Virus record (IMG/VR): IMGVR_UViG_3300023179_000009
Coordinates: 62,001 to 126,000 of that record
Length of the DNA stretch: 64,000 nucleotides
Strand: one strand, 5' to 3'
Shown one piece after another: positions 56,122-64,000 of this stretch (positions within the stretch are counted from its first letter, which is position 1; every line of letters starts with the position of its first letter). The notes below the pieces were generated by a model. The model was not told where the DNA came from. It was given only the letters and a program-made list of their open reading frames with translations, and searched no databases. Position numbers and translations under genes: made by a program.

Positions 56122-56215
56122 TTTTCCTTGACACTCAACAAGATTTGTGCAAAGATCAATACGGTGTAAGCGATGGTTCTTGCGTTTCGGAATTAAATGA
56201 TTTTAGGAGATAAAA

Positions 56216-59043
56216 TTGGAAACTACAGGATACGAAAACCTTCATAGACATAGCGATTTTAGCCTCAAAATTTAGGGGCCTTAATGACGAAAGTCATTAA
56301 GCAAACTGGATGAATTCGGGGAAGCCCTAACGTAAAGACGAGGGTAATCCCGAGCCAAGCATGTAATGCATTACATGAAGGTGTAGAGACTACTGGCGAG
56401 GTTTAGCCCTCTTAATTACCAGCAAGAGCGTCCAGCACCCCTAGGGGTGATGATATAGTCCACTCCACAAGAAACTGTGGGCAAAAGTGCTTAGACGGGT
56501 TTGCAAAAGTATCTGAATATGCCGAGTATCAAAAGCAAATAAATCAAAAGTATTTGTGTATCACCGATCATGGTGTGATGGGGGCTATTCCACAACAAGT
56601 TGCAGAATCTGAAAAACATAATTTATATCCTTTGTTTGGATGTGAACTTTATGTTAATCCGATGCAACCAAAAGTTTCTTCACGATCAGAGTCGGCGGAG
56701 TTTCGTAAATCTTTAGAAGATGAAGCAACGCAAAAAAAGTTTGATAAATCTTATCATTTATTGGCCATAGCCTACAATGATGAGGGTTATTCTAATCTTG
56801 TTCGTTTAACTTCTTGGGGCTGGATACACGGCTTCTATAGAAAGCCTAGGGTAAATCATGAAGCACTCATGAAATATAAAGAAGGAATTGTGTTCACCTC
56901 CGCCTGTGCCAACTCAGAAATAGCAAGAGCTTTTTTTGATGGTGGCGACGAGGCTGGCTTCGCCATGTTGGAAAAATATATGGCTATGTTTGGTGAGCAT
57001 TTTTATCTTGAACTTATGATGCTCGATTTTAAAGATCAAAAGCCTTATGATGCTTTTTTAATTCGTGCTCATGATAAGTATCATGTTCCGCTGACAATGA
57101 GCACCGATTGTTTTGTTAAAGGCACTTTGGTTCTAACTAATTTTGGTTTCAAAAATATCGAAGAAATTAAAGTTGGCGATAAGGTTTTTACTCATAAAAA
57201 CAGGTGGAGGTTAGTTGAACATGTTGGATCACGTTCACTAAGATCAAATGAAAAAATTTACCGTGTATCAACTAGTGCTGGTACATTTGCTTATGAAGCT
57301 ACGGGCAATCACGAAGTATATGTGGCCACTTATGAAAAAAATAAATGGAACTTTGATTGGGTAAGAACAGACGGATTGAAATCAAAAGAACACCACCTCA
57401 CAGTTCCTAAGATAAGTGAATCTAAAGTTTTCTCCGAAAAGGATTTAAGCGAAATAGATATTTTGTCCTTCTTGAAAAAAGAAGATTTTCAAGAAGGAAC
57501 AGACTACAAATCATCCAGAAAAGGCAACATGGGTTGCCGCCTTCAGTTCAACAGGGACACTCAAGAATTTTGGTCTTATCGTGGTTGGGATAGAAAATTT
57601 AGAACCACTATTCCCAGAATGTTAAAGGTAGATGATGATTTTGTTAAAATGTTGGGATGGTATATCGCTGAAGGTTGGAGTGAAAAAAATAGCAATCAGG
57701 TGGGTTTTGCTTTTCACATAGAAGAAAAACATGTAGCTGAGTGGTTAATTTCTTATTTTTCACGTTTTGATATTATTGCAAAGATTTATAAGGTCTCTGA
57801 GAACGGTATAGCAATTCGTTTTTCTTCAGTTGTCTTTAATCGTCTTTTGGGTCAAATGTGTGGTTTTGGTGCTAAAAACAAACATCTACCGAAGCCCAAC
57901 AATCAAGTTTGGCTAAAGATGTGGTCGAAAAGACAACTTTCTATGATTATTCGTGAGTATTGGCGTGGCGATGGGGGCAACGCTGCAAATAATGATGGTT
58001 TTATTTTCACATCCACATCTAAAATTTTAATACAAGAGATCGCTTTTGTTTTTAATTCTTGTGGTGTTTTTTCTTTACCTTGTGAAGAAAAAAATAGAAA
58101 AGATACATGGAATACCAAAAAATATATATCCTACACGGGAGGAAGAGGCGATCAAGTGTTGTCTTTTTTAACGAATGGAGATTGTAAGCCTTTTTTGCAC
58201 AAGGAAGTAATTGAATTTAAAGATTATTATTTGGTGCCAATCAAAGAAATCACTGCTCTTAAACACCAAGAACAAGAAGTTCACTGTTTTCAGGTAAAGG
58301 ACGATCATTCGTTCACTGCTAATCTTTACGCTGTGAGTAACTGCCACTACTGTCTTAAAGAGCAAAGTCATAATCAACGTCTTATGCTCATGCAGCAAAA
58401 CAAAAGAACGCTTGCTGAGATGGAGGCACTTGTAGAATCCGGCCAAGCAGAGGATCTATTTGAACTACAAGACACAAATCTATGGCTGAAGAGTGAGGAT
58501 GAACTAAATGAAATGTGGGAAGAAAAATTTCAAGATGTTATCGATTATGAACTTTTCAAACAATCCAAAGCAAACACAGTCAAGATTGCAGAGTTTGCCA
58601 AAGGCGTACAAATCAATAAAGAAATAAAACTTCCTAAAATAAATGACGCAGATGCACTTTTGTGGGAAGAAATCAAAAAAGGTTTTATGAAGCGTGGTTG
58701 TCCTAGAACTCCTGTTTATATAAAGCGAATCCGTGAAGAATACGATCTAATTTCAGAGAAGGGCTTTTCTAGTTACTTTTTAATTCAAAAAATGATGGTG
58801 GATGAAGCTCGAAGGAAGAGTCCAGAGATATTAGGTTTTGGAGACGGATCAGAAGCCGTTGGTCCTGGTAGAGGTTCGGTTGCTGGCTCTTTGGTTGCCT
58901 ATTGTCTTCGTCTTCATGATGTGGAGCCAATATTCCACGATTTGAGATTTAGTCGTTTTCTAAGTCCAGCACGTGGTGGCAAGCAAATGAAAATTCGCCA
59001 CACAATAGACCCAATATCTCATGAATCAATCAATTTGGATTAA
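56216..59043 (+). CDS. dnaE: DNA polymerase III alpha, N-terminal part only (PHP plus start of palm); exons 56216-56265 and 56490-59043; contains intein
   Basis: TTG start after AGGAGA; spliced HRHSDFSLLDG, TDHG, GCE, STD|CHY, GPGRGSVAGSLVAY, RFSRFLSPAR then stop. Confidence 0.9.
56266..56489 (+). ncRNA. Group I intron (224 nt, no ORF) in dnaE
   Basis: P GAATTCGGGGAA, Q AATCCCGAGC, R GTAGAGACTA (56383), S GATATAGTCC (56452); U.G in P1, terminal G; removal restores the frame. Confidence 0.92.
57109..58341 (+). mobile_element. Intein with LAGLIDADG endonuclease (411 aa) in DnaE PHP domain
   Basis: CFVKGTLVLT...VGDKV, ATGNHEV, MLGWYIAEG, REYWRGDG, ...AVSN|C. Confidence 0.93.
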
Positions 59044-59936
59044 TATCTGTTCATCATTCTTCGCATATATGATTTCATCAATGCTTTTTGCAAATTGTGA
59101 ACAGCGGGATGATCTTTAAACATTTCGGGATTCATTTCGGGCATTTGGTCATCTTTTTCCATTGAGGCTTCCATGTCCTCATCTTCCATGCCTTCCATGT
59201 CCTCATCTTCCATGCCTTCCATGTCCTCATCTCCCATGCCTTCCATGTCCTCATCTTCCATGCCTTCCATGTCCTCATCTTCCATGCCTTCCATGTCCTC
59301 ATCTTCCATGCCTTCCATGTCCTCATCTCCCATGCCTTCCATGTCCTCATCTTCCATGCCTTCCATGTCCTCATCTTCTTCATCGTGATCAACTTGGTCA
59401 TCATCATGATCTTCTTGGCTTAGTTGATTGTGAAAAGGAGCGGCAACTTCTTCGTTCATGGCTCTTGCCAACTTGTTACACATGTCTGGTCCGTATGATT
59501 CGTGGGCCATAACCTCAGAGATGTGTTTGTAGGTTTCACGGTGATTCAAACACTCTGCCACAAGACAGCCTAGTAAACCACTCTGTTTTAGGTTTCTTAC
59601 TAAAGTTTCAATAATAACAGGGTTTTTAGAAGAGGCTTTTGTTACTTTTGATAAAAGAGCAGACTCCTCAACAGTAGGCAATTTGACAGATTTTTTTTCA
59701 TTATTTGCTTCTTGAGTTTTTGGCTCATAAACCAACTCGTCATCGCCTTCGCCTGCTAATCCTTTTGATGAATTTTTTTTACCCTTGGTTGTTTTAGCAA
59801 CATAAGGAGATTTGCCACCTTCTGGGCGATCAGGTGAGGTTGATGGGTCCACATTATCTCCATCGTTGCATACCTTGGGCTTGTCTTGTAATTTTCCTTT
59901 AGAATCCAAGTATTCATCAAATTTCATAAAAGCCAT
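59040..59936 (-). CDS. Acidic repeat protein, capsid-targeting-like N-terminus
   Basis: MAFMKFDEYLD; EDEDMEGM repeats; SD GAGG. Confidence 0.75.
   Translation of the reverse strand: MAFMKFDEYLDSKGKLQDKPKVCNDGDNVDPSTSPDRPEGGKSPYVAKTTKGKKNSSKGLAGEGDDELVYEPKTQEANNEKKSVKLPTVEESALLSKVTKASSKNPVIIETLVRNLKQSGLLGCLVAECLNHRETYKHISEVMAHESYGPDMCNKLARAMNEEVAAPFHNQLSQEDHDDDQVDHDEEDEDMEGMEDEDMEGMGDEDMEGMEDEDMEGMEDEDMEGMEDEDMEGMGDEDMEGMEDEDMEGMEDEDMEASMEKDDQMPEMNPEMFKDHPAVHNLQKALMKSYMRRMMNRY
59169..59378 (-). repeat. 24-bp coding tandem repeat, 8.75 units
   Basis: EDEDMEGM units; GDEDMEGM variant at units 3 and 7. Confidence 0.95.
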
Positions 59937-60825: not shown

Positions 60826-61417
60826 GGGGTCGTAAAGGTATCGATTGGATAACGAGAGACTCAATGGCAAGTCGAGGTTGGTCAATGGCCTCGTTAAAAA
60901 TTGACCAAAGCCTTAACTGGCAAAAATAGTTACGCAATGGCTGCTTGATAAAAAGAGCAACCACGGACTGCGAATGCGAGCGGGTAGCATTCAAAAGTTC
61001 GTTGTCAAATCCCGCTGGACTAGTGCGGTCAACTTGCGTCTAGTCGAGAAAATAGGTTGAAAAGTCCGTCAGGAATCCTGTTCGTTGGAGTCTCGGCGGT
61101 CTGATAAAAAACGAAACAAACTTGTAGAGGTTGTTTTTCAAATTATCGCAAGACAGGGGTTCAGGTCGAGCCGTCAATAAATGAAAGTTTATTGATTATG
61201 ATTGGATGAATTCGGTGAAACCTTAACGAGTAAAGTCGAAGGCAATACCGAGCCAAGCCCAAGATACATCTTGGGAAGGTGTAGAGACTACTAGAGGAAT
61301 AAAGTTTCCTTAATAACTAGCATGAGCGTCCAACGCCTAAAACCGCAAGGTTATGGTGAACATATAGTCCATTAACTAAGAAATTAGTTGGGGAAATATC
61401 GACTCCCCTCGACTCCA
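60826..61417 (+). ncRNA. ssrA: tmRNA, intron-containing; tag (A)GKNSYAMAA
   Basis: Acceptor stem GGGGUCG/CGACUCC-A with G3.U70; TTAACT then ORF 60919-60948 and tandem stops; spliced T-arm AGGGG-UUCGACU-CCCCU. Confidence 0.93.
61161..61398 (+). ncRNA. Group I intron (238 nt, no ORF) in tmRNA T-loop
   Basis: P GAATTCGGTGAA, Q AATACCGAGC, R GTAGAGACTA (61281), S CATATAGTCC (61361); guide GGUCGA-GCC pairs both exons. Confidence 0.9.
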
Positions 61418-61974: not shown

Positions 61975-64000
61975 ATGTCGAAGCCAGCGAAAACATTGCT
62001 GAACAATTATTTTAAAATAAAAACAGAATACAATAAAATGCCAAAAACTTTACAGGGAATTGATGATTTAGGAGATTATGATAATACTTCTATTTCAACA
62101 TATGTACATTGGACAACAGATGATTATAGGGTTTTTGTTCCTGCTGCGCCCACTATTAAAAGTTTAATACCGGGCGTTTATGAAATGCACAAGAGCGATA
62201 ACATTGGTTTATATTTTGAAAAAATACCAGTACGTTCAGAAGGTCTCCTAAGATTCCCTGACACCAATTCAGAGCGTGTTGTAAAAGAGATTCAAAAATT
62301 TTGGGAAAGAGAAGATGTTTTTGAATCGTATAGTTTAACGTATAAGCGGGGAATCCTGCTATACGGCCCCCCAGGTTGCCATGCCAAGGGAACGAAAATT
62401 TTGATGTACAACGGCGATCTTAAAAAAGTTGAAGACATAGTTGTCGGTGACGAGGTTATGGGACCAGACAGTCGGCCTAGGCGTGTTTTGGAACTTATAA
62501 GAGGCCAAGATCAAATGTATAAAATTACTCCAAATCGTGGCGAACCTTTTGTTGTGAACGGTCATCACATTTTGAGTTTACAAAGAAGCAGCAAAAGAGA
62601 CTGCGCAACGCCAGAAATATTAAATATTTCTTTAAATAATTACAAAAAATTATCTAAGCCATCTCAAGTCAAATATAAATTACGTCGTTGTGCTGTAGAT
62701 TTTTCGAATCTATCAAATGAAGTAATCGTAGATCCTTATTTTTTAGGTGTTTGGTTAGGAGACGGCTCAGAGAATAAAACCGAAATCAACACCGCTGATA
62801 AAGAGATAAAAGATTATTTATATCAAATAGCAAGTAGTTATAATCTACACGTAACAGAGAGAAGGAAAACGGATTCTATTTGTTGCAGTTATACACTCTC
62901 TAGTAATGGAGGCATTGGCGAAAATGGCTTGCGTAATGATTTGAAAAAAATCGGGGTATTTAATTCAAAACACATTCCAAATGAATATTTTGTGGCTTCA
63001 AGAGAAGTCCGCTTGCAACTTCTAGCAGGGATAATTGACACAGACGGTGGTTATTCAACGGCTTCTTGGAGGAAGAATCAAAAATTTAAAAATAAAGGCT
63101 ATAAAGGTTATTTTGAAATAATTCAAAAGAGGGTCGATCTATCCAATCAAATTGTAAAATTGGCAAGAAGTCTTGGATTTGGAGTTACTATTCGTAGTTG
63201 TAAAAAAACAATTAAAAAAACCGGGTTTGTAGGAGAATATCAAAGAATTAGTATTTTTGGAGACATTTCCATTATTCCTACAAAAATTCTTAGAAAGAAT
63301 GCTCTTAAAGGTCGTGCAAATAAAGACCCACTTCGCACGGGAATATCTTTAATAGAATCTTTGGGCTTTGGTGATTTTTATGGCTTCACGCTGTCGGGAG
63401 ATCATCTATACCTCACAGATGATTTTATTGTTCACCACAACTCTGGTAAATCGTGTACAATTCAATTAATTATGGAAGATGTGGTGAACAGAGAAGGAAT
63501 TGTCATAAAGTTCACAGATCCTTTTTTGTTTACCCAAGGCATGCGAGTTCTTAGACAGATACAAGAAGATACACCTGTGGTTGTCATAATTGAAGATATA
63601 GATTCTTTTTTAGAAATTTATAACGAATCTGAGATACTAAATGTTTTAGACGGAGTAAACGAAGTCAATAAAGTTGTTTTTTTGGCTACCACTAATTACC
63701 CAGAAAAACTCGGAGCAAGAATAGTAAACAGACCCAGTCGTTTCGATAAAAGGTTTAGAATAGGTTACCCTTCAAAGACTTCAAGAAGAATGTATTTCGA
63801 ACACTTGATTGGCGAAGGAGATGAAAATAAACTTAAACAAAAAATATCAGATTTAAATTTGGATTTGGATCGCTGGGTCGAAGACACAGACGAGATGTCG
63901 GTTGCCCATCTCAAGGAGTTGTTTATACAAGTTGTTATTATAGGTGACACTTATGAAGAATCAATAGAAACTTTAAAAAGTATGAAAGAAAACCTTGAAG
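61975..64000 (+). CDS. AAA+ ATPase with intein (3'-truncated; not in ORF track)
   Basis: GILLYGPPG|SGKS, IIEDID, LNVLDG, ATTNYPE, NRPSRFD; frame open to window end. Confidence 0.9.
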   Translation, partial: MSKPAKTLLNNYFKIKTEYNKMPKTLQGIDDLGDYDNTSISTYVHWTTDDYRVFVPAAPTIKSLIPGVYEMHKSDNIGLYFEKIPVRSEGLLRFPDTNSERVVKEIQKFWEREDVFESYSLTYKRGILLYGPPGCHAKGTKILMYNGDLKKVEDIVVGDEVMGPDSRPRRVLELIRGQDQMYKITPNRGEPFVVNGHHILSLQRSSKRDCATPEILNISLNNYKKLSKPSQVKYKLRRCAVDFSNLSNEVIVDPYFLGVWLGDGSENKTEINTADKEIKDYLYQIASSYNLHVTERRKTDSICCSYTLSSNGGIGENGLRNDLKKIGVFNSKHIPNEYFVASREVRLQLLAGIIDTDGGYSTASWRKNQKFKNKGYKGYFEIIQKRVDLSNQIVKLARSLGFGVTIRSCKKTIKKTGFVGEYQRISIFGDISIIPTKILRKNALKGRANKDPLRTGISLIESLGFGDFYGFTLSGDHLYLTDDFIVHHNSGKSCTIQLIMEDVVNREGIVIKFTDPFLFTQGMRVLRQIQEDTPVVVIIEDIDSFLEIYNESEILNVLDGVNEVNKVVFLATTNYPEKLGARIVNRPSRFDKRFRIGYPSKTSRRMYFEHLIGEGDENKLKQKISDLNLDLDRWVEDTDEMSVAHLKELFIQVVIIGDTYEESIETLKSMKENLE
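62377..63441 (+). mobile_element. Intein with LAGLIDADG endonuclease (355 aa) in Walker A
   Basis: CHAKGTKILM, VVNGHH, YFLGVWLGDG, LLAGIIDTDG, ...IVHHN|S. Confidence 0.95.

What the first reader, a model, noticed from the sequence alone, without database searches (positions are those of the whole stretch)
56216..58341. dnaE is doubly parasitised in its PHP domain and has a hidden 50-nt first exon
Seen: ORF callers start at 56554, but splicing 56266-56489 joins TTG-ETTGYENLHRHSDFSL to LDG..., restoring the first HxH metal motif. A 411-aa LAGLIDADG intein sits in the last metal motif (STD|CHY) and ends Ser-Asn without the penultimate His. Recognisable PHP ligands (HxH, D, H, E, H, D, H) are retained, consistent with an active proofreading nuclease. 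RNA and protein splicing are both needed for one domain.
Basis: partly seen in the sequence, partly recalled or inferred. Interest (0 to 1): 0.7.

Follow-up and report, generated by a model that had tools for sequence, protein, structure and literature searches.

The report
Intron plus intein in phage dnaE
The first half of a giant freshwater phage's replicative DNA polymerase gene is interrupted, inside its proofreading (PHP) domain, by a self-splicing RNA intron 50 bases after the start codon and by a self-splicing protein intein; both are real, but each is an ordinary example of a well-known kind of selfish element.

Summary
A 224-nt ORF-less group I intron (56266-56489; Rfam 98.4 bits) separates a 50-nt first exon (TTG 56216-56265, AGGAG 6 nt upstream) from the rest of the gene. 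A 411-aa LAGLIDADG intein (57109-58341) sits between the Asp and the Cys-His of the last PHP metal motif. Intron-less and intein-less relatives read straight across both junctions. The same intron occurs at the same site in L084, L119 and L120. The same intein occurs at the same site in 16 metagenomic DnaE protein clusters. All nine PHP metal ligands are present. Ser-Asn at the intein's end is the norm for this intein family, not a defect.

The ORF is only the N-terminal half of a dnaE that is split across this phage clade; the catalytic half starts 5 kb downstream, just past the window. Introns in phage polymerase genes, inteins in the Pol III alpha PHP domain, and genes carrying both are all already described.

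No RNA or protein data exist, so splicing is inferred. The verdict is a new member of known kinds, of moderate interest. The most unusual lead is in relatives: an HNH endonuclease gene upstream of dnaE coincides with odd insertions at this same site.

The parts
56128..56156 (+). Promoter-like TTGACA, 17-nt spacer, AAAGAT upstream of exon 1 (inferred only)
   Evidence: Read. L084 has TTGACT-17-AAGAAT at the equivalent place, and L003 and L004 have CTTGAC motifs. The consensus scan did not score it.
56205..56209 (+). Shine-Dalgarno AGGAG, 6 nt before the TTG start
   Evidence: No such motif precedes the TTG at 56554.
56216..56265 (+). Exon 1 (50 nt): TTG start and codons for ETTGYENLHRHSDFS plus CT of the next Leu. 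It carries the HxH metal motif.
   Evidence: Colinear with intron-less relatives. Against L119, the 13 conserved codons show four synonymous changes and one Tyr-to-Phe change. Exon 1 ends in U56265, which pairs with G56276.
56266..56489 (+). Group I intron, 224 nt, with no ORF. P1 is 56262-56266 paired with 56275-56279. P7 is 56388-56392 paired with 56456-56460. The terminal omega-G is G56489. An extra helix lies between P7 and P3' (IA-like).
   Evidence: Rfam 98.4 bits. Same site in L084 (102.4 bits) and in L119 and L120. 28 of 68 predicted pairs show compensatory changes. The unspliced exon-1 frame stops at TAG 56273-56275.
56490..57108 (+). Exon 2, N-extein: the rest of the PHP domain (LDG...TDHG...E...H...C...STD)
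   Evidence: Pfam PHP 97.8 bits. Alignments to Taq and M. tuberculosis DnaE. The ligand columns are invariant in the clade.
57109..58341 (+). 411-aa intein with a LAGLIDADG homing endonuclease: Cys1, TGNH (block B), LGWYIAEGW and YWRGDG motifs, DDHSFTAN (block F), and a Ser-Asn terminus
   Evidence: The endonuclease part resembles PI-PkoII, E 8e-6. Family alignment. dN/dS 0.12 against L119.
58342..59043 (+). C-extein of the N-half: CHY (last PHP His), thumb and N-terminal palm with GPGRGS, ending FLSPARGGKQMKIRH...LD and a stop
   Evidence: Pfam DNA_pol3_alpha profile positions 5-98 only. Alignment to M. tuberculosis DnaE1, whose CHY starts at residue 227. Relatives end at the same point.

Best explanation
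The window lies in a 459-kb phage genome, probably from fresh water. Region 56216-59043 encodes the N-terminal half of a split family-C replicative polymerase (DnaE). Two independent selfish elements have invaded it, both within the PHP proofreading domain.

1. An ORF-less group I intron of the phage IA-like type sits after the second base of codon 17. The transcript must self-splice to join the 50-nt exon carrying Met...HxHSDFS to LLDG. The steps would be guanosine attack after U56265, which forms a U.G wobble with G56276 in P1, followed by exon ligation after omega-G56489. Without splicing, translation stops at TAG 56273 and exon 2 has no start codon before 56554.

2. A 411-aa class-1 intein with a LAGLIDADG homing endonuclease sits between the Asp and the Cys-His of the last metal-binding motif. 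After translation it must excise itself, using Cys1, the terminal Asn and the +1 Cys, to recreate STD-CHY.

The mature ~457-aa N-half has all nine PHP ligands plus the GPGRGS nucleotide-binding loop. It then associates non-covalently with the separately encoded C-half (PDIDIDY catalytic aspartates, fingers, HhH) to form the polymerase.

Shown here: the anatomy, the junctions, conservation, and homologous elements at the same sites. Inferred: that splicing actually happens, that the PHP domain is an active exonuclease, and that the two halves assemble.
For: Intron:
- Full-length Rfam match at 98.4 bits.
- Canonical U.G wobble at the 5' splice site and omega-G at the 3' end.
- G56489 is the only nearby G that keeps the reading frame (reading).
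- Identical insertion site in L084 (66% protein identity over the PHP domain) and in L119 and L120 (~96% protein identity), all from other samples.
- 28 of 68 consensus pairs carry compensatory changes.
- Intron-bearing alleles share the exon sequence AGCCU that pairs with the internal guide sequence. Intron-less alleles use other Ser-Leu codons.
- Exon 1 evolves like coding sequence.

Intein:
- Pfam Hint_2 and LAGLIDADG_3 above their cut-offs.
- All catalytic residues are invariant across 17 sequences.
- Junctions are colinear with intein-less relatives and with M. tuberculosis DnaE1 D226-C227-H228.
- 16 protein clusters carry a homologous intein at this site.
- Against L119, dN/dS is 0.12 for the whole intein and 0.09 for its endonuclease part.
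- Synonymous divergence is 0.185 in the intein against 0.65 and 0.73 in the two exteins, which implies recent exchange.

Host gene:
- The exteins have dN/dS 0.02.
- The nine ligand columns are invariant.

Split:
- All but one clade relative end after FLSPARGG. L092 is fused.
- The C-halves lie 8-21 kb away in four other phages.
- The predicted N-half/C-half complex scores ipSAE 0.74 against a best control of 0.00. That mark was reached by 51 of 78 solved complexes and 2 of 108 mismatched pairs. The three runs agree on at least 94% of contacts, and partner pLDDT is at least 78.
Against: There is no direct evidence of splicing. No public RNA run holds the stretch, and three metatranscriptomes from the same study laid no reads on it. 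The Pfam Intein_splicing model scores below its cut-off (22.6 against 35.8 bits), although Hint_2 passes. P10 pairing with the 3' exon is weak (my reading). The penultimate intein residue is Ser rather than His, which is the family norm. The complex prediction may simply echo the fold of solved one-piece DnaE structures (caveat printed).
Confidence: 0.88

Rival explanations
1. The intron does not splice, or splices poorly. The protein is instead made from the TTG at 56554. It would lack HxH and the first Asp, so the N-half would keep its polymerase role but have a dead PHP nuclease.
For: An ORF does start at 56554. PHP domains with lost ligands exist in functional DnaE proteins such as that of E. 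coli (established knowledge; see the weaker E. coli alignments).
Against: No Shine-Dalgarno motif precedes 56554, whereas AGGAG precedes 56216. Exon 1 is under protein-level constraint. The intron core and its helices are conserved with compensatory changes across four assemblies. All nine ligands are invariant in the clade. A start at 56554 would also delete the first strand of the barrel, which every intact relative retains.
Confidence: 0.04
2. The locus is a decaying pseudogene. The intron and intein would be degenerate remnants, and the phage would replicate with another polymerase.
For: The gene is in pieces. Several relatives carry frame-breaking changes at the same 5' site (L087, L097, L099, L101). 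The intein in the C-half begins with Thr and has a low-complexity middle.
Against: Extein dN/dS is 0.02 over a synonymous divergence of about 0.7. The frames are open. Every catalytic residue of the intron, the intein, the PHP domain and the palm is intact. PF07733 matches nothing else in the 91%-complete genome.
Confidence: 0.03
3. The two elements are more than parasites and act as conditional switches. Splicing of the intron or the intein would be gated by conditions such as nucleotide pool, redox state or metal ions, so that polymerase or proofreading activity is timed during infection.
For: The intein lies inside a metal-binding motif and uses Cys1 and Cys+1. Zinc inhibits the Ssp DnaE intein (paper titles cited in PMC4031507). 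The intein is kept under purifying selection.
Against: Nothing in the sequence requires this. Close relatives lack one or both elements with no compensating change. Purifying selection on the endonuclease, together with low synonymous divergence, is what a mobile element would show.
Confidence: 0.05

Closest known systems
[quoted passage not shown]
   Same: Same ribozyme family (Rfam RF00028). An extra helix lies between P7 and P3'. The core is 70-87% identical over partial stretches to introns of cultured Staphylococcus, Klebsiella jumbo, crAss-like, Flavobacterium and Synechococcus phages, and it resembles introns in 72 viral contigs. It sits in a conserved catalytic motif of a DNA-metabolism gene.
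   Different: None of the 72 contigs that share its 17-nt core had it at this dnaE site. The site is only 50 nt into the gene, so the first exon escapes ORF callers. I did not check where phage G's introns lie. The subgroup assignment rests on helix order, not on a formal test.
ORF-less psbA intron plus the adjacent free-standing endonuclease F-CphI in cyanophage S-PM2 ('collaborative homing'; recalled from Zeng, Bonocora and Shub 2009, not read here)
   Same: In relative L084 the same ORF-less intron lies just downstream of a free-standing HNH-type endonuclease gene (PHROG 559, E 4e-17).
   Different: The window's own genome has no homologue of that endonuclease. No cleavage site is known.
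Inteins of bacterial Pol III alpha, including the cyanobacterial split DnaE inteins (Novikova et al. 2016, PMC4760082)
   Same: The host protein is the same. That survey reports insertion points in the PHP domain as well as in the fingers. The Ssp DnaE intein also lacks the penultimate His (paper title cited in PMC4031507).
   Different: This intein is contiguous and carries an endonuclease. It is known here only from phage or metagenomic DnaE proteins. I could not establish whether its exact site (between the D and the CH of the last DxH motif) equals a catalogued PHP site.
Ribonucleotide reductase genes of Bacillus prophage SPbeta, which carry both group I introns and an intein (Lazarevic 2001, PMC55833, cited in PMC4760082; not read here)
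   Same: One gene needs both RNA splicing and protein splicing.
   Different: The host gene is different. Here both elements fall within one ~230-residue domain, and the gene is in addition split into two ORFs.
Split minimal Pol III alpha of group 2.2 jumbo phages (Iyer et al. 2021, PMC7824862)
   Same: The catalytic subunit is divided into an N-terminal nucleotide-binding part and a C-terminal Mg-binding and DNA-binding part, encoded by separate genes. Here the split falls at Pfam PF07733 profile positions 98/100.
   Different: These phages keep a complete PHP domain, fingers and HhH. The two halves lie 5-21 kb apart on the same strand. One clade member, L092, is still fused.

Membership tests
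Group I self-splicing intron (Rfam RF00028) | Conserved catalytic core (P3-P9, with P7 holding the guanosine-binding site) scoring above the curated threshold | tested here: met
   98.4 bits against a gathering score of 50, over model positions 1-253. P7 is GACUA/UAGUC at 56388-92 and 56456-60.
Group I self-splicing intron (Rfam RF00028) | 5' splice site after a U that forms a U.G wobble in P1, and a terminal omega-G | tested here: met
   U56265.G56276 lies within the P1 helix 56262-66/56275-79. The intron ends in G56489.
Group I self-splicing intron (Rfam RF00028) | Helices supported by covariation | tested here: met
   28 of 68 predicted pairs show changes on both sides across four sequences. 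The sample is small and three of the four are related.
Group I self-splicing intron (Rfam RF00028) | Removal restores a continuous, conserved host sequence | tested here: met
   The spliced product is colinear with intron-less relatives.
Group I self-splicing intron (Rfam RF00028) | Self-splicing activity, or spliced RNA in vivo | not testable with these tools
   No RNA run holds the stretch.
Intein (Hint domain, class 1) with LAGLIDADG endonuclease | Splicing blocks: Cys/Ser1 (A), TxxH (B), block F Asp and His, terminal Asn (G), and a +1 Cys/Ser/Thr | tested here: met
   C1, TGNH, DDHSF, the terminal N and the +1 C are invariant or nearly so in 17 sequences. Hint_2 scores 35.2 bits against a cut-off of 28.4. 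Intein_splicing scores 22.6 bits, below its 35.8 cut-off.
Intein (Hint domain, class 1) with LAGLIDADG endonuclease | Penultimate His (block G:6), an assisting residue that is common but not obligatory | tested here: not met
   The residue is Ser, as in 15 of 16 homologues. Splicing without it is documented (references 74 and 87 in PMC4031507).
Intein (Hint domain, class 1) with LAGLIDADG endonuclease | In-frame insertion at a conserved host site, with intein-less alleles colinear | tested here: met
   Relatives read LTQD|CHYC. M. tuberculosis DnaE1 has CHY at residue 227.
Intein (Hint domain, class 1) with LAGLIDADG endonuclease | Two LAGLIDADG motifs with their acidic residues | tested here: met
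   LGWYIAEGW and YWRGDG are present. LAGLIDADG_3 scores 32.8 bits against a cut-off of 22.5. Similar to PI-PkoII, E 8e-6. Conserved in the family.
Intein (Hint domain, class 1) with LAGLIDADG endonuclease | Protein splicing and homing activity | not testable with these tools
   The only support is indirect: dN/dS 0.12, and synonymous divergence about four times lower than in the exteins.
DnaE-type Pol III alpha with an active PHP exonuclease | Nine metal ligands (M. tuberculosis DnaE1 numbering H14, H16, D23, H48, E73, H107, C158, D226, H228; numbering recalled from Rock et al. 2015) | tested here: met
   H-R-H and D lie across the exon junction. The others are TDHG, GCELY, SYHLL, SACAN and STD|CHY. 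These columns are invariant in the clade.
DnaE-type Pol III alpha with an active PHP exonuclease | One polypeptide carrying PHP, palm with catalytic aspartates, thumb, fingers and HhH | tested here: not met
   The ORF stops after FLSPARGG. PDIDIDY, the fingers and HhH are in a second ORF at genome 126081-130124.
DnaE-type Pol III alpha with an active PHP exonuclease | 3'-5' exonuclease activity | not testable with these tools
   No test was possible with these tools.

The most novel reading that the evidence does not exclude
The coding stretch for HxHSDFSLLDG at the 5' end of dnaE may be the target of a free-standing HNH homing endonuclease that sits directly upstream of dnaE in some relatives. 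On this reading, the window's ORF-less intron is one of several alternative 'immunity' insertions at that target. The others are a 47-nt perfect hairpin preceded by a stop codon (L087) and a 41-nt hairpin (L097), placed between the Asp and Phe codons and out of frame. These would have to be skipped by the ribosome or otherwise recoded, as with the MobA / gene 60 bypass cassette of T4. That kind of cassette is so far known only in topoisomerase genes.
Probability: 0.15. Interest if true: 0.75.

Novelty: new member of a known kind. Interest (0 to 1): 0.4.

Why it matters
Annotation: automatic callers miss the 50-nt exon. The public protein for the near-identical strain (P0001) begins at LDG, so it lacks the first two of the nine PHP metal ligands (the HxH pair), and PHP activity would be mis-scored in surveys.

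Biology: within about 12 kb of one huge-phage genome lie a group I intron in dnaE, another in the tmRNA gene, three inteins (dnaE N-half, an AAA ATPase P-loop, dnaE C-half) and a split replicase. This makes a compact natural system for studying how selfish elements pile up in replication genes. The intein's synonymous divergence, about four times lower than that of its host gene, is direct evidence of recent exchange between phage lineages.

Practical: the family offers 17 natural Cys1 / Ser-Asn / Cys+1 inteins that splice (by inference) in an unusual Asp-Cys-His extein context.

Tried and rejected
1. RNA evidence. No RNA run holds the window stretch. Three freshwater metatranscriptomes from the same study laid nothing on it. 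No run was listed for L097.
2. Same intron at this dnaE site elsewhere. A scan of viral contigs for the intron's 17-nt core gave 72 loci with related introns, none in dnaE. The site-identical copies came instead from protein-based searches.
3. Split intein or cis-intron joining the two dnaE halves: rejected. Neither cut end has a Hint motif. There is no further Rfam intron in the window. Five genes, some on the other strand, lie in between.
4. Whether the ~90-aa N-terminal extension of the C-half is a diverged duplicate of the palm's first helices. BLASTP gave E 0.19. hhalign gave P 7e-4 at 26% probability, in the expected register. This is suggestive only.
5. A close-relative scan for the C-half found nothing. 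Handles gave the C-halves instead.
6. The hairpin inserts in L087 and L097 as a repeated MITE family: rejected. Each is unique in its record.
7. Simple frameshift or matched take-off and landing codons for those inserts: no convincing solution (my reading).
8. Canonical boundaries for the tmRNA intron could not be found (notebook).
9. The sigma-70 scan did not score the TTGACA motif upstream of exon 1.
Full report
**Context.** The window is bases 62001-126000 of a 458,813-bp IMG/VR virus record. CheckV estimates it 91% complete, and its G+C content is about 33%. Runs listed as belonging to the same study are freshwater metagenomes. The nearest record in the phage collection is an uncultured 595-kb phage at 46% protein identity. 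This is therefore a 'huge phage' known only from metagenomes.

**The observation.**
- The ORF listing gives an 829-aa ORF from TTG 56554 to 59043.
- Its frame is open back to a TAA ending at 56415 and has no start codon before 56554.
- Rfam finds a full-length group I intron at 56256-56481, at 98.4 bits against a gathering score of 50.
- Upstream, TTG 56216 follows a TAG ending at 56206 and is preceded by AGGAG at a 6-nt spacing.
- Its frame reads ETTGYENLHRHSDFSL and then hits TAG at 56273 inside the intron.
- Exon 1 ends in U56265, which forms a U.G wobble with G56276. The P1 helix is 56262-66 paired with 56275-79.
- The intron ends in G56489, which is the only nearby G that keeps the frame.
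- Splicing gives ...LHRHSDFSL|LDGFAKVSEYAEY.

**Comparative proof of the junctions.**
- Five close relatives, then 39 more distant ones, were fetched from viral contigs.
- Most read straight through, for example L003 MYHPITGFEHLHRHSDFSLLDGFARVSEYAKY, with no gap relative to the spliced product.
- Three other assemblies carry the same intron at exactly the same phase. These are L084 (66% protein identity over the PHP domain; Rfam 102.4 bits) and L119 and L120 (a ~96% protein-identical strain from two further samples).
- Between these copies P2, P6, the P7.1-like helix, P8 and P9 change by compensatory substitutions. 28 of 68 RNAalifold pairs have changes on both sides.
- An extra helix lies between the 5' strand of P7 and P3'. 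That is the arrangement of subgroup IA, the usual phage type. This is an inference from helix order.
- Intron-bearing alleles share the exon bases AGCCU that pair with the guide sequence. Intron-less alleles use other Ser-Leu codons.
- Against L119, the 13 conserved codons of exon 1 differ by four synonymous changes and one Tyr-to-Phe change. Exon 1 is therefore translated in this frame.
- The intron has no ORF. Its core resembles introns of many cultured phages and of 72 viral contigs.

**The intein.**
- Residues 207-617 of the exon-2 translation (57109-58341, 411 aa) begin CFVKGTLV and end LYAVSN, followed by CHY.
- Pfam matches Hint_2 and LAGLIDADG_3 above their cut-offs, and Intein_splicing below its cut-off.
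- The middle of the intein resembles the PI-PkoII endonuclease.
- Intein-less relatives read (L/V)T(Q/N)D|(C/T)HY. M. tuberculosis DnaE1 aligns with its CHY at residue 227. The intein therefore splits the last DxH metal motif.
- A search of 5.8 billion proteins found 16 DnaE clusters with a homologous intein (42-95% identity) at the same D|C junction.
- In an alignment of these 16 clusters (the window's intein plus 14 in the alignment itself, P0008 and P0009 read separately), Cys1, the block B Thr and His, the LAGLIDADG Glu, block F DH, the terminal Asn and the +1 Cys are invariant or nearly so. 15 of the 16 end in Ser-Asn.
- The missing penultimate His is thus a family trait. Splicing without it is documented for other inteins, including Ssp DnaE (references listed in PMC4031507).
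- Against L119, the exteins have dS 0.65 and 0.73 with dN/dS 0.02. The intein has dS 0.185 with dN/dS 0.12, and 0.09 in its endonuclease part. Its central 480 nt are 97-100% identical.
- The intein is therefore under purifying selection and has been exchanged between lineages far more recently than its host gene diverged. This is what an active homing element would show.

**The PHP domain.** Alignments to the Taq and M. tuberculosis enzymes place H-x-H and the Asp of LLDG across the exon junction. The other ligands are TDHG, GCELY, SYHLL, SACAN and STD|CHY. These columns are invariant in the clade. All nine ligands are present. That fits an active proofreading nuclease, but it was not tested.

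- The ORF ends ...FSRFLSPARGGKQMKIRHTIDPISHESINLD, at Pfam DNA_pol3_alpha profile position 98 of 260.
- Profile positions 100-259, beginning PDIDIDY, lie in a second ORF at genome 126081-130124. That is 5 kb downstream and just past the window end. This ORF also carries the fingers, the HhH domain and another intein.
- Between the halves lie an acidic-repeat ORF on the other strand, a PspC-like ORF, a methyltransferase, a tmRNA gene and an AAA ATPase gene.
- Neither cut end has a Hint motif, so trans-splicing is excluded.
- Nearly all clade relatives stop at the same place with a conserved ARGGKQxKxR tail. In four larger records the C-half lies 8-21 kb away on the same strand. L092 still has a fused 1157-aa enzyme.
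- A complex prediction places the N-half's C-terminal part against the C-half. The ipSAE is 0.74 against a best control of 0.00. That mark was reached by 51 of 78 solved complexes and 2 of 108 mismatched pairs. The three runs agree on at least 94% of contacts, and partner pLDDT is at least 78. Because one-piece DnaE structures are solved, this shows likeness to the intact fold rather than proving binding.
- A split of Pol III alpha into nucleotide-binding and Mg-binding parts has been described for a minimal version in other jumbo phages (PMC7824862).

**Comparison with what is known.**
- Inteins are common in bacterial Pol III alpha, with a hot spot in the fingers and 'additional insertion points' in the PHP domain (PMC4760082).
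- Self-splicing introns have been noted in the polymerase gene of phage G (PMC7824862).
- Genes carrying both introns and an intein are known from Bacillus prophage ribonucleotide reductase genes (PMC55833, cited in PMC4760082).
- The finding is therefore a well-documented new member of known kinds. What distinguishes it is that both elements lie in one domain, that the exon is only 50 nt long, and that the host gene is itself split.

**A lead from the relatives.**
- In L084, L087, L099 and L101, an ORF matching HNH endonuclease and endonuclease VII PHROGs lies directly upstream of dnaE.
- These are exactly the loci whose HxH...LLDG coding stretch is interrupted. L084 has the intron. L087 has a 47-nt insert that begins with TGA and forms an 18-bp perfect hairpin. 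L099 has an 8-nt insert. L101 has a 1-nt deletion in a T run.
- Among the 19 other clade loci only L097 is interrupted, by a 41-nt hairpin. This count ignores relatedness between loci.
- The hairpins are unique in their records.
- This recalls collaborative homing and the MobA / gene 60 bypass cassette of T4, which is known only in topoisomerase genes (10.1101/2022.08.31.505936).
- I found no convincing take-off and landing codons or slippery site that fits both inserts, and there are no RNA data.
- The window's genome has no homologue of this endonuclease.

**Verdict.** Splicing itself remains inferred.

Noticed in passing
window 60826-61417: A tmRNA gene (Rfam 82.7 bits, missed by ARAGORN) is interrupted in its T-loop by a second group I intron (61151-61390, 65.5 bits) closely related to the dnaE intron. 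The near-identical strain L119 has the gene uninterrupted. T-loop introns in tmRNA are known, mostly from bacteria (PMC11915505). Here, no junction that restores L119's T-loop (UUCGACU) leaves a terminal G on the intron, so the boundaries are unresolved.
   Followed up: partly
window ~62250-64000, continuing to genome 126065 (L001:76-1212): An AAA ATPase gene running off the window end contains a LAGLIDADG intein that ends HN|S, immediately before the GKS of the Walker A loop.
   Followed up: partly
genome 126081-130124 (window-equivalent 64081-68124; L123:82-4125): The C-terminal half of the split dnaE carries a ~410-aa intein at GFNK|...|SHS, four residues from the classical cyanobacterial split-intein site (site recalled, not checked). 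The intein begins with Thr (TLTEDTII), not Cys or Ser. Its ~300-aa middle is Lys/Arg-rich and low in complexity, with no recognisable endonuclease. Pfam Intein_splicing scores 35.7 against a cut-off of 35.8 bits.
   Followed up: partly
window 58342-59043 and genome 126081-126360: The dnaE gene is split across the clade at the palm, with a conserved ARGGKQxKxR tail on the N-half and a conserved ~90-aa extension on the C-half. That extension may be a diverged duplicate of the palm's first helices (hhalign P 7e-4, weak). L092 is unsplit.
   Followed up: partly
L087:2950-2996 and L097:2952-2992: Unique 47-nt and 41-nt hairpin inserts lie between the Asp and Phe codons of HxH(S/T)D|FS(L/T)LDG in dnaE. 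Their lengths are not multiples of three, and L087's insert starts with a TGA stop. They may be a gene-60-like bypass or another recoding device, or else gene disruption.
   Followed up: partly
L084:1899-2714, L087:2449-2862, L099:1746-2918, L101:2052-2945: A free-standing HNH-type endonuclease ORF lies directly upstream of dnaE only in relatives whose dnaE 5' motif is interrupted (intron, hairpin, 8-nt insert TAGTTGAC, or 1-nt deletion). It is absent from the window's genome.
   Followed up: partly
L090 and L099 (dnaE N-half, residues ~384-799): Relatives carry a different LAGLIDADG intein at GPGRG|C...HN|S(G/A)xGS, inside the nucleotide-binding loop of the palm.
   Followed up: no
L086:3001-4314: This relative lacks eight residues (LTQDCHYC) exactly at the intein insertion site, so it loses the last two PHP ligands. 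This could be an imprecise intein loss or a deletion that gives immunity to homing.
   Followed up: no
genome 333883-334091 (L122:1984-2192) and 318868-319123 (L121:2069-2324): The genome has two more group I introns. One (40.9 bits, below threshold) appears to sit in a tRNA-like gene next to tRNA-Asn and tRNA-Lys. The other (70 bits) overlaps the 3' end of an HNH_3 endonuclease ORF.
   Followed up: partly
window 59040-59936 (-): A 298-aa ORF converges on the dnaE N-half stop. It contains eleven tandem copies of an 8-aa acidic repeat, (M/G)EDEDMEG. It has no Pfam or PHROG match and is syntenic in L119.
   Followed up: no
P0001 (JGI protein; L119:3001-5553): The public gene call for the near-identical strain starts at the Leu codon (TTG) of LDG, that is, at the second base of exon 2. 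The database protein therefore lacks the HxH motif.
   Followed up: yes
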